A stretch of 64,000 bases of DNA, taken from assembly GCF_000143415.4 (NCBI RefSeq), contig NW_003314329.1, positions 19,421 through 83,420 on the forward strand, written 5' to 3'. This document shows, piece by piece, positions 35,950 through 39,040 of this stretch. A program made the position numbers and the translations under genes. The DNA is from Selaginella moellendorffii. Lineage: Eukaryota; Plantae; Lycopodiophyta. Under the pieces are notes generated by a model that worked only from the letters and a program-made list of their open reading frames with translations, ran no database searches and was not told the DNA's origin. Position 1 is the stretch's first letter, and every line of letters starts with the position of its first letter.

Positions 35950-36877
35950 GGAGGACTGCAGTGGAGCCAGTTTGGCCAGGAAAGGCCAGTTTGGCCCAGG
36001 AAGGCCGGACCCAGTGTTGGGTGATGAGCTGCCCACTAGGAAGTCCAAGACTAGAGTGAACACGGACCGACAAGCGGGGTAGCTTGGTGAAGTGTTCAAG
36101 AGCCGGCTCTAGTTCCCCCGGGAGATCGACTGGCCGATGCTCCCAGTCCAAGTGTGGGTGGCACTATCTACTTGGATACCAGGCGTGGCTCAACGGAACC
36201 TCGCTCTAAGCCCATGGCTAGAGCACCTAAAGGCGAAAGGCGGGGAGAGTACCCAGGTGGCTCGCGTAAGGCCACGGTGTTCCGAAATGTTGTCCCAAAA
36301 GCCTAGACTGTGGAAAGGAAGAGGAGCAGTCCTCTGGGGTAGTGACCAAGGACACAGTCGTGTGGTGAGGAAGTCCTAGAGGACCATGGGACTTAGTGGC
36401 CGGGCCTGTGGGCCTCGATCCAGTGGCAGTGTTGGTAAACACGGCCAGGGGCAGAAAGGGACTTGGTAGGAACTGACAAAGGGACTTTGGGGAAGGCGAT
36501 TCCCCAAGTCTGTGGGCATCCTAAGGATGCTAAGGAGCGGGTCTAGGATGACCACTCGTGAACAGATGGCCCAGTCTTGGAGAGACGGGATGGTGATGCA
36601 AGTGGTATTGGACCACTAGTGCAGCAAAGGTGAATGGGCATGGCCTTAGCGTAACGGGCCGAGATGTCAGTGGTACCTTCGGGTGTCGGTCTTCGGACCG
36701 GACACGTGGAGCACTTGGACCAGGTGCAAGTGTTGAGTGGCATGGATGCCATTCTTGGGGCTAGCAAGTCCCAAGTCCTGAATTGGACTAATGGAGGTTG
36801 TGAATGAGACTCCTCCAAATGGTCGAAGGTGTGGTTAAGTGACTAAAGTAGAATGGAAAAATTAGTCGCTTACAATT

Positions 36878-36889
36878 TGGTATCGGAGC
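36878..36889 (+). promoter_or_regulatory. Primer-binding site (initiator tRNA-Met-like)
   Basis: TGGTATCGGAGC, 11/12 to the canonical TGGTATCAGAGC, 3 nt after ...TTACA. Confidence 0.85.
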
Positions 36890-39040
36890 TGTTCCTTAGT
36901 CCGACTTTTATTGGTGCTCAAGTATATCACCACTAGTGTTGGCATCGGAAGGTCCGAGGAGTGGGCCTATCCTTGAGGAGTAGCAAGTCGGGAAGACATG
37001 GCTCTCCATTACAGTTCATGTGTGAACTTGTAGACGAGGTGGTGGATAGAAAAGGGCCAATAATGGAACAACTTTGGGATCTTGGGAACAGTGCAAGGTT
37101 TTCCTCATTGAGTTGAGGATGTGATCCGGATGAGCATTTGTCTCAGCAAATTGGCTTAGGTTGTTGTGGTAAACAACTAAAGTTGGGATCACGGGAAAGA
37201 CAGAGACTCCAAAACAATAAAGGAGTCACAAGATTATCCTCATATAGTTGAGGTTGGTGCTCATGAATGTGAGACCAAAGGTAATGACCGTGGAAGGTCA
37301 AATACGGAAGAGGACTCAAGTCCTTGAAATGGTAGCCGGGGCTACCTCTAATAAATGCTGGAACAACCCAAGGAGTTGGGGGTGTATTAAGTGGATGAGT
37401 TGGTATTCTCATCACATGGACAAGTAGTCCTAAGGGGCAAAGGTTGCCCCCAGAGAACAAAATCAAGTGTCGGAGTAACACTTGTGAAAATAGTCCTTTT
37501 GAGTAGGACCGGAATGCAAGAAGTGTATTCCAGTGAGCTAGTGCCTCACAAGTAGGACCTTACAGGTCGGTGGATTAACCAAGTCCAAAATTGCTAGACG
37601 ACTCAAGTAGAGTCAAGGGATGGTCCTAAAAGGACTGATAGAAGCATTTGGACTGAGGTGCGTTGTAGCCCACAAAGGATGGGAAGGGGATCATTGGATC
37701 CAAGGATGAGAACAGAGGGTATCTCATCGATGGCAAAATGTGCCATGCTAAAGTTATGGGAAAGGTGTTCCCAGAAGAAAACAACTTTGATATAAAGTTG
37801 GGTGTGACCTCTATGGGGCAGTGCTAACAGATGGTTGGCATGAGAAAGAGCGGTGTTGGTCTTGGCAAAGACTTAGACACGAAAGGGAAATGTCATAGAG
37901 GTAGGCTCGTGGAGCCGATGGTGTGGAGACACCAAATGTGCCAAGGTGTGATACCTTGAGGCTATGTTGGTGGGTTCATGAGAACCCCTTGCCAAAGGAA
38001 TCCCAATGGAAATGGAAATGGCATAGCCTAAGCTGCAGAGCATGCAATTGGAGTGTGGTGACCCAGATAATGATGGAGGTGTGAAAGCACCAAGCAATGA
38101 GTTGTAGCACTTGACAACTATGAGGCAACTAAGCAAGAGGTGCAAAATAACTGGTTAAACGGGTAGAAGGTAGCTACCCAAGACTTCTTAATAGCATAAG
38201 GAAGTCGGATATACCCTTACGGGGGATAAGTTGCTTGTGTTGCGATATAGTAAGTCAATGTCATAAAAGGAAATACTCATTGTCAAGAAAGCCATCATTG
38301 GGACACCTGGACACTCTAGAACACCAGAAGGTGGTGTTTGATGTCGCGAGGGCAATGGATAAAGCCCAAGGGACTAAGTCCCTAGCGAATGATGGATAGA
38401 AGGTGCTATCCAAATGTCCAAGGTTGCGGAGACAGGAGAGGACTGTCTACCCAAGTTGGACAAAGCCAAAAATGGAATTTTGGCAAGGCTAGTGATGGGC
38501 ATGTAAAGGCCCATAAACAACAATGTAATCCCAGTGTGTGGGATTATAAGCTGAGCATACCCGGATTGAGGAACCACTCCCTGGGCTATTGGGTAGGTTC
38601 ATCCCTAAGAATACTTGCTAAGGCATGATAAAAAGTGCAAAGCTATCCTCCTGGTCTGGAGGAGAATGACCGAAGGAAAGGTGTGAAGCCAAAGGCAAGT
38701 AGTATTGGGATGGAACTGAACCATAGAAATCAAAGGGCATATCCAACAGTGGTTATGAAAGTTGGGAGTGGAGAATCAAGAGGGTGCTCGAGGATGTTGT
38801 TGCTAGCAACCGTGATGCCATGGAGAGTCTAAAATATGGAATTGTCCATGTTAGACTATATGGCAACTATAAAACTTGCGAAAGGGGAGGCCTTAGCAAG
38901 CTGAGGGACAGAGTTCCTTCAAGGTTCCCAAAGACGATTCTAGGTAGCATAGTACCTAGAAAGGCCAAGTGTAAATGGTTCATGGAACGCGCGAAATCAG
39001 AGTGGCGCAGCAGAAGCGTGGTCTTGAAGCTTGCCATGAG

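What the first reader, a model, noticed from the sequence alone, without database searches (positions are those of the whole stretch)
36865..37047. Leader of the large element is collinear with the whole Cassandra internal domain: shared lineage or helper family
Seen: after GCTTACA-(A)TT-PBS, both the large element (+, 36878-37047) and Cassandra (-, 13892-13657) show the same blocks in the same order: TGGTATCRGAGC, GTCCGACT, TTGGT, CACCAC, TTGRCATC, GGTCC, GAGGRGTAG, GGCTCTC, GTTCA, TGAACTTGYAG, GTGGTGGAT. In Cassandra GTGGTGGAT abuts the 3' LTR; in the large element at least 2 kb more internal DNA follows. Known: TRIMs are non-autonomous, and to my knowledge the mobilising partner of Cassandra is not firmly established. 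Inference: the Cassandra interior is the retained packaging leader of this larger family. One retroelement lineage would then have two derivatives using different rRNA promoters (Pol III 5S and Pol I 35S), giving a lead to the autonomous helper.
Basis: partly seen in the sequence, partly recalled or inferred. Interest (0 to 1): 0.86.

Follow-up and report, generated by a model that had tools for sequence, protein, structure and literature searches.

The report
Cassandra interior shared with large element
In a spikemoss ribosomal-DNA array, the first 170 bases inside a large, abundant, gene-less jumping gene are a diverged copy of the whole tiny interior of a Cassandra mini-element. The two parasites therefore probably depend on the same still-unidentified helper, but the large element is not that helper.

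Summary
Observation confirmed. All eleven blocks are present, in the same order, at the stated coordinates.

- **Better than chance:** with the primer-binding site removed, the two stretches align far better than 1000 dinucleotide shuffles (z 3.7-7.6). They also beat all 2356 real 158-nt pieces of the window and 43 post-PBS stretches from other elements. A standard single-sequence nhmmer search gives only E 3-5.
- **What the large element is:** it starts at 35165 and its LTR runs to 36874. The 2.15 kb after the PBS has no ORF over 112 aa and no Pfam match, then an N gap cuts it. It is LARD-like, not autonomous. Public DNA contigs show a very abundant, diverged family.
- **Other shared signals:** LTR ends (TGTRAG...GCTTACA). 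From read overhangs, the family's true 3' end, ...AACTT-8 nt-GGTGGTGGAG(T)|TGTGAG. So the last 34 nt of the "leader" look like a second copy of the hairpin-plus-PPT-end module.
- **Reading:** two non-coding families carry one set of replication signals and probably share a helper. Which gave rise to which is open, and no helper was found here.
- **Prior notes:** the scan noted the same similarity before on other DNA of this genome (s1-395610).

The parts
35165..36874 (+). 5' LTR of the large element (TGTGAGAC...GTCGCTTACA), 1710 bp
   Evidence: The match to the other rDNA units breaks after 35164. Public DNA contigs have loose ends before 35164 (60 contigs) and behind 36874 (74 contigs).
35881..35949 (+). 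rDNA-promoter-like module inside the LTR, ending in TATAGTAGGG
   Evidence: 81% identity over 69 nt to 18644-18576, about 2.0 kb upstream of 18S and in the same transcriptional sense.
36875..36877 (+). ATT spacer between the LTR and the PBS (Cassandra has TT)
   Evidence: Read directly from the sequence.
36878..36889 (+). Primer-binding site TGGTATCGGAGC, one mismatch to the Cassandra PBS TGGTATCAGAGC
   Evidence: Only two such sites occur in the window.
36890..37013 (+). Post-PBS leader with the blocks GTCCGACT, TTGGT, CACCAC, TTGGCATC, GGTCC, GAGGAGTAG and GGCTCTC, collinear with the Cassandra interior
   Evidence: 5' half z 4.6-7.1.
37014..37047 (+). Hairpin GTTCAtgtgTGAAC plus ...GGTGGTGGAT, a copy of the module that precedes the 3' LTR
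   Evidence: z 7.6-9.3 against the Cassandra 3' part. The family's own sequence before the 3' LTR is ...AACTT-8 nt-GGTGGTGGAG.
37048..39040 (+). Further interior of the large element, non-coding as far as can be seen
   Evidence: No ORF over 112 aa, no Pfam hit in 10 pieces, no protein relatives. Unique within the window.
39041..39140 (.). Assembly gap of 100 N that removes the rest of the element, the rest of the spacer and the 26S 3' part
13895..14089 (-). Cassandra 5' LTR with a 5S-derived piece
   Evidence: Rfam 5S match at 34.4 bits, E 4e-5, below the gathering score. Sequence read.
13881..13892 (-). Cassandra PBS TGGTATCAGAGC
13657..13880 (-). Cassandra interior after the PBS, with a 34-nt tandem duplication. 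It ends in GTTCA..TGAAC and GTGGTGGAT.
13463..13656 (-). Cassandra 3' LTR (TGTAAGC...GCTTACA)
13458..13462 (-). Target-site duplication CTCAG (second copy at 14090-14094). The insertion lies at the 5' end of 26S.
   Evidence: Sequence. The 26S model starts at 13466.

Best explanation
The 170 nt after the 5' LTR of the large element are a diverged homologue of the complete interior of the Cassandra-type TRIM, not just of a leader.

The interior runs, in order: tRNA-iMet PBS, a roughly 125-nt leader, a small hairpin, and the end of the polypurine tract.

The large element belongs to a very abundant, non-coding (LARD-like) LTR family. Its LTRs are unrelated to Cassandra's except at the tips (TGTRAG...GCTTACA), and its real 3' end carries the same AACTT...GGTGGTGGA motif.

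The two families therefore carry one set of cis-acting replication signals: integrase ends, primer site, leader for packaging or dimerisation, and plus-strand primer site. They sit behind two different borrowed promoters, 5S in one and rDNA-promoter-like in the other. Most likely both are copied in trans by the same helper's Gag, RT/RNase H and integrase.

Because the large family has the hairpin/PPT-end module twice (at 37014-37047 and before its 3' LTR), one template switch or recombination between the two copies would turn a large interior into a Cassandra-sized one. The reverse step is equally possible.

- Shown: the homology, the shared tips, the non-coding interior, and the abundance of the family.
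- Inferred: the shared helper, the role of the leader in packaging, and the route between the two sizes.
For:
- The alignment beats shuffles for the whole stretch and for each half.
- It is the top score among 2356 real pieces of the window.
- It exceeds all 43 other post-PBS stretches.
- The U5 end GCTTACA is identical, and the U3 starts match at 7 of 10 positions: TGTGAGACAC against TGTAAGCAAC.
- Read overhangs before the LTR start in other copies read ...AACTTCGTCTATGGGTGGTGGAG.
- A contig only 82% identical runs collinearly through 36849-37127, so the arrangement is a family trait and not a one-off.
- The interior has no ORF or domain.
- Both RNAs can close the interior with the stem (A/U)AUC-ACCAC / GUGGUGGAU(U/A), with one two-sided change.
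- Precedents: a rice TRIM derived from a copia element by deletion between duplicated 25-bp internal sequences (PMC4717578), and Cassandra-like TRIMs that share part of the interior but not the LTRs (10.1101/2023.07.14.548913).
Against: - Only two sequences could be compared.
- The similarity is patchy, and nhmmer gives only E 3.1 and 5 at window scale.
- The controls come from unrelated organisms, not from other iMet-PBS elements of this genome.
- The family's 3' end is known only from a 30-nt overhang consensus with 0.58 agreement.
- The 3' part of this copy lies in an N gap, so its second LTR, PPT and TSD were not seen.
- No RNA raw reads lie on 36024-39040.
- Nothing here shows packaging or a helper.
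Confidence: 0.65

Rival explanations
1. Cassandra arose from this larger family by loss of everything between the leader and the PPT, and coding members of the same family are Cassandra's helper.
For: - The hairpin/PPT-end module is duplicated in the large family, which offers a ready deletion route.
- There is a rice precedent for such a deletion (PMC4717578).
- Unchecked scan notes report gypsy or chromovirus elements with rDNA-promoter LTRs and with Cassandra-like PPT and termini.
Against: - This copy is non-coding for 2.15 kb after the PBS.
- No coding member was seen here.
- The LTRs are unrelated (z 0.08).
- The direction of descent is not resolved.
Confidence: 0.25
2. Capture. An ancestor of the large family took up a whole TRIM interior (PBS to PPT end) by template switching at the shared PBS during co-packaged reverse transcription. 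The large family is then the derived one.
For: - A PPT-end module 160 nt after the PBS has no obvious use in a large element, and looks like the tail of a TRIM interior.
- Unchecked scan notes describe several Cassandra chimeras joined exactly at the PBS in this genome.
Against: - The two stretches are old and diverged, so this is not a recent chimera.
- No trace of a Cassandra LTR follows 37047 above background.
- There is no 5S signal in the interior.
Confidence: 0.25
3. Convergence. Two unrelated non-autonomous families evolved similar short motifs independently because they serve the same helper.
For: - The conserved parts are short blocks separated by variable spacers.
- The LTRs are unrelated.
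Against: - Eleven blocks lie in one order with similar spacing.
- The significance of each half separately fits descent better than convergence.
Confidence: 0.07
4. Chance resemblance, plus what all iMet-PBS elements have in common.
For: nhmmer gives only E 3-5 at window scale.
Against: - 0 to 6 of 1000 shuffles reach the score, depending on the scoring scheme; under three of the four schemes it is 0 or 1.
- 0 of 2356 real pieces reach it.
- 0 of 43 other post-PBS stretches reach it.
Confidence: 0.03

Closest known systems
Cassandra TRIMs (Kalendar et al. 2008; reviewed in PMC7215508 and PMC10886601)
   Same: The small element here has about 195-bp LTRs with a 5S-derived piece, an iMet PBS, a short self-complementary interior, a 5-bp TSD and no genes.
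   Different: - The host is a lycophyte.
- The 5S piece scores below Rfam's gathering score.
- The new point is that the interior has a homologue at the 5' end of a large non-coding family.
- Kojima 2024 states that there is no indication of which family mobilises Cassandra.
Cassandra-like TRIMs without the 5S promoter in Carduoideae (Maiwald et al., 10.1101/2023.07.14.548913)
   Same: These elements share part of the Cassandra interior but have different LTRs.
   Different: Those are small TRIMs with ordinary LTRs. Here the partner is at least 3.9 kb long, has a 1.7-kb LTR with an rDNA-promoter-like module, and holds the whole interior including a PPT-end copy.
OsajRetroS10 / OsajLTRA10 of rice (Gao et al. 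2016, PMC4717578)
   Same: The TRIM interior is collinear with the start and end of a larger element's interior, and a duplicated internal sequence flanks the deletion breakpoint.
   Different: There the LTRs are 97% identical and the large element is an autonomous copia. Here the LTRs are unrelated and the large element is non-coding.
LARDs (large retrotransposon derivatives; Kalendar et al. 2004, as cited in PMC7215508)
   Same: Long LTRs, a long non-coding interior, high copy number, and presumed mobilisation in trans.
   Different: The full length and the second LTR were not seen in this copy. The LTR carries an rDNA-promoter-like module.

Membership tests
Cassandra (TRIM with a 5S-derived LTR) | LTRs contain a 5S rRNA-derived stretch with the Pol III promoter region | tested here: met
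   For the small element, Rfam 5S matches both LTRs at 33.7-34.4 bits, E 4e-5 to 6e-5, below the gathering score of 38.
Cassandra (TRIM with a 5S-derived LTR) | The same feature, asked of the large element | tested here: not met
   No 5S match in 36850-39040 at E up to 10, and none in its LTR at gathering score. Its LTR against the Cassandra LTR gives z 0.08.
Cassandra (TRIM with a 5S-derived LTR) | iMet PBS next to the 5' LTR, PPT next to the 3' LTR, under 1 kb, no genes | tested here: met
   The small element is 627 bp (14089-13463), with its PBS at 13892-13881 and no ORF over 91 aa.
LARD (large non-coding LTR element) | Long interior without gag or pol | tested here: met
   2151 nt after the PBS have no ORF over 112 aa, no Pfam hit and no protein relatives. 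The rest lies in an N gap.
LARD (large non-coding LTR element) | Two LTRs, a PPT and a TSD | tested here: inconclusive
   The 3' end of this copy is in the gap. Contig overhangs at both LTR edges, and a PPT-like consensus before the LTR start in other copies, support the structure indirectly.
Autonomous Ty3/gypsy or Ty1/copia element (a helper) | gag and pol reading frames after the leader | tested here: not met
   None in the visible 2.15 kb. By contrast, the control Ty3/gypsy element L025 starts a 1463-aa gag-pol frame 95 nt after its PBS.
Pair of TRIM and parent element | LTR sequence identity between the TRIM and the larger element (79-98% in PMC4717578) | tested here: not met
   Only the tips agree: GCTTACA, and 7 of 10 positions at the start. 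The LTR bodies are unrelated.
Pair of TRIM and parent element | TRIM interior collinear with the ends of the larger interior | tested here: met
   for the 5' end. (overhang consensus) for the 3' end.

The most novel reading that the evidence does not exclude
In this lycophyte, one retroelement lineage (by unchecked scan notes, a chromovirus) supports a guild of gene-less passengers. All keep its PBS, leader, pre-PPT hairpin, PPT end and LTR tips, but each has replaced the LTR promoter with a different ribosomal-RNA promoter: 5S/Pol III in Cassandra and 35S/Pol I in the large family. The shared cassette would then be the recognition signal that identifies Cassandra's long-sought helper.
Probability: 0.25. 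Interest if true: 0.8.

Novelty: new variant of a known kind. Interest (0 to 1): 0.5.

Why it matters
Which autonomous element copies Cassandra has been an open question since 2008. Kojima 2024 (PMC10886601) states that there is "no indication".

A defined cassette of about 170 nt, shared by Cassandra and a second abundant non-coding family, gives a concrete search key: PBS, leader blocks, hairpin, GTGGTGGA, and the LTR tips TGTRAG/GCTTACA. Any coding element of this genome that carries it is a candidate helper.

It also shows that the promoter part of the LTR and the replication signals of such elements evolve as separate modules. On its own, the finding is a lead and not an answer.

Tried and rejected
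- **Looking for other copies or coding relatives through proteins.** The 112-aa ORF at 37143-37481 has no relatives. Exact look-ups of two ATG ORFs found nothing.
- **Pattern scans.** The metagenome scan for PBS + TCCGAC gave 119 loci, none related beyond background; they were used as controls. Some of these contigs are from human-gut metagenomes. They look bacterial, none was taken for human, and none was followed further. The viral collection gave nothing.
- **Decayed Cassandra LTR after 37047.** A loose alignment at 37168-37377 gives z 3.2 with one scoring scheme and 0.5 with another. A 26S stretch scores almost the same (212 against 218), and Rfam finds no 5S there. This is not distinguishable from background.
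- **Covariation.** With two sequences, RNAalifold gives little. The MAFFT alignment is poor in the 3' half, and the leader's own fold is not better than shuffles (z -1.4).
- **tRNA resemblance.** I recalled from memory that GGAAGCGTGGTGG in Cassandra equals part of plant tRNA-iMet. I could not verify it, so it is not used.
- **Pre-PPT hairpin as a published chromovirus hallmark.** I did not find this in the papers I opened, so it is not used.
- **RNA evidence.** Raw RNA reads of one run (about 12% read) do not cover 36024-39040. A few low-depth contigs from runs that are only guessed to be RNA do cover it, and they could be DNA. Expression is not shown.

Full report
**Setting.** The window is a tandem array of five 35S rDNA units of 12.0-13.5 kb on the minus strand. 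Each spacer holds a 5S gene. Earlier notes of this scan name the genome as Selaginella moellendorffii. I did not test that; the sequencing runs are coded.

There are two LTR-type insertions in the window.
- **The small element.** A 627-bp element on the minus strand (14089-13463) sits at the very 5' end of one 26S gene, with the target-site duplication CTCAG. Its roughly 195-bp LTRs each contain a truncated 5S-like stretch (Rfam 33.7-34.4 bits, E about 5e-5, below the gathering score). It is therefore a Cassandra-type TRIM.
- **The large element.** It lies on the plus strand in the spacer of the third unit, which is more diverged than the others. The match to the other units breaks after 35164 and TGTGAGAC begins. 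An LTR-like stretch ends in GCTTACA at 36874, followed by ATT and the PBS TGGTATCGGAGC. Everything from 35165 to 39040 is unique in the window, and a 100-N gap at 39041 cuts it off.

**The observation.**
- With the PBS removed, the 158 nt of the large element and the 224 nt of Cassandra align with z 3.7-7.6 against 1000 dinucleotide shuffles.
- Taken apart, the 5' half gives z 4.6-7.1. The 3' part gives z 7.6-9.3, or 5.3 without the final GTGGTGGAT. The middle gives about 3.
- Against real sequence, the leader is the best of 2356 pieces of 158 nt from both strands of the window.
- As a stand-in for "other Met-PBS elements" I scanned public metagenome contigs for the PBS followed by TCCGAC. I scored 43 stretches that lie after an LTR-like ...CA or ...TA end. 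Although they were pre-selected to share one block, their best scores are 161-175 against 235.
- The similarity is nevertheless weak by ordinary standards. It is about 84% over aligned columns with many gaps, and nhmmer gives E 3.1 and 5 for the two collinear halves at window scale. The case rests on the place having been fixed beforehand, directly after the only two PBSs in the window.

**What the large element is.**
- The 2151 nt after the PBS hold no ORF over 112 aa. Ten stop-free pieces have no Pfam match even at E 10. The longest ORF has no relatives among 5.8 billion proteins. As far as can be seen, it is a non-coding, LARD-like element.
- When public data of the same organism label were laid on 35100-39040, 169,516 DNA contigs at 80% or more likeness lay on it. 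Summed depth over the interior is of the same order as over the rDNA spacer flank. The family is therefore very abundant and diverged.
- Contig overhangs mark both LTR edges: 60 before 35164 and 74 behind 36874.
- One contig only 82% identical runs collinearly from 36849 to 37127. The LTR-PBS-leader-interior arrangement is therefore a family trait, not a local accident.
- Raw RNA reads of one run did not cover 36024-39040. A few low-depth contigs from runs only guessed to be RNA did. Expression is not shown.
- The LTR holds a 69-nt, 81% copy of the rDNA region about 2.0 kb upstream of 18S, in the sense orientation, ending in TATAGTAGGG. This fits the separate note on the same LTR (s1-419359).

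**A new point: the PPT-end module occurs twice.**
- The overhangs before the LTR start in other copies give the consensus ...AACTTCGTCTATGGGTGGTGGAG. The agreement of 0.58 is about what a mix of 3' LTRs and 5'/solo LTRs would give.
- This has the same AACTT, 8-nt spacer and GGTGGTGGA as 37025-37046 of the "leader". It is close to the Cassandra junction GAACTTGCAGGGAAGCGTGGTGGAT|TGTAAGC.
- So the last 34 nt of the finding (hairpin GTTCAtgtgTGAAC plus GGTGGTGGAT) are a copy of the module that precedes the 3' LTR. The 170 nt as a whole equal a complete TRIM interior.
- The LTR tips also agree: an identical GCTTACA at the U5 end, and TGTGAGACAC against TGTAAGCAAC at the U3 end. The LTR bodies are unrelated (z 0.08).
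- Both RNAs can close the interior with a stem between (A/U)AUC-ACCAC and GUGGUGGAU(U/A). One pair is changed on both sides. With two sequences this is only a hint.

**Interpretation.**
- The two families share every cis-acting signal that a helper's proteins must recognise: integrase ends, primer site, leader, and plus-strand primer site. They differ in the promoter-bearing body of the LTR.
- The most economical reading is common descent of this cassette and dependence on the same helper.
- The duplicated module offers a one-step route between a large and a Cassandra-sized interior. The rice TRIM OsajRetroS10 has a duplicated 25-bp internal sequence flanking its breakpoint (PMC4717578), which is a precedent.
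- The opposite route is equally open: capture of a TRIM interior by template switching at the shared PBS.
- Cassandra-like TRIMs that share part of the interior but not the LTRs are already known in Carduoideae (10.1101/2023.07.14.548913), so the kind of relationship is not new. What is new here is the partner (large, abundant, with an rDNA-promoter-like LTR), the completeness of the shared cassette, and the host.

**The helper.**
- The literature still has no candidate for Cassandra (PMC10886601).
- Nothing in this window encodes one, and I could not search the genome.
- Other notes of this scan, which I could not check, report Cassandra-gypsy and Cassandra-LARD chimeras joined at the PBS. 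They also report gypsy or chromovirus families with the same PPT, pre-PPT hairpin and termini.
- Among my controls, one autonomous Ty3/gypsy element (L025, with a 1463-aa gag-PR-RT-RH-INT frame) shows the same order of modules...GTTACA|AT|iMet PBS, then a hairpin just before the PPT, then T|TGTAAC. It has no leader similarity above background. That is compatible with a gypsy-type helper, but no more than that.

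Noticed in passing
window 13458-14094 (-): The Cassandra copy sits at the first bases of the 26S gene of one rDNA unit, with a clean 5-bp TSD (CTCAG). The other units lack it.
   Followed up: partly
window 20774-20892 and 33590-33708 (-), and the other units: Each rDNA spacer carries a full 5S gene on the same strand as the 35S unit (linked arrangement).
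   Followed up: no
window about 1400-1700, 14400-14800, 27400-27800, 40900-41300, 53000-53400 (-): A stretch in every ITS1 aligns to the Cassandra LTR almost as well as the real 5S genes do (scores 332-336 against 340). This is the 5S-like ITS1 piece noted elsewhere in the scan.
   Followed up: no
window 30459-35164: The spacer of the unit that hosts the large element is only 92-97% identical to the other units, which are 99.9% alike in the genes. It is an older or escaped unit, and the assembly breaks (100 N) inside it.
   Followed up: no
window 35390-35870 (+): The LTR of the large element holds about 480 nt of short GAGTCC/GAGATGGA-type repeats that resemble the spacer subrepeats of the rDNA (64-80% matches to 22300-23400 and 18487-18560).
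   Followed up: partly
window 9434, 9675, 23047, 23267, 61089, 61330 (-): RNA reads that start on the promoter-like module of the LTR run on into the 220-241-bp spacer subrepeats. Those subrepeats therefore carry promoter-like copies that are represented in RNA.
   Followed up: partly
window 13695-13762 (-): The Cassandra interior contains a perfect 34-nt tandem duplication (GGGAGAGCTGCGGCTCTCAGCTTCCGTTCACGAG). It doubles a GAGAGC/GCTCTC hairpin.
   Followed up: no
L025 (also L017, L019, L020, L028, L065, L079, L099, L100, L103, L113, L118): A family of Ty3/gypsy elements of unknown host in soil-type metagenomes. It has LTRs TGTAACAC...GGGGTGTTACA, an AT spacer, an iMet PBS followed by the hairpin GGTCGG..CCGACC, and a hairpin directly before the PPT.
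   Followed up: partly
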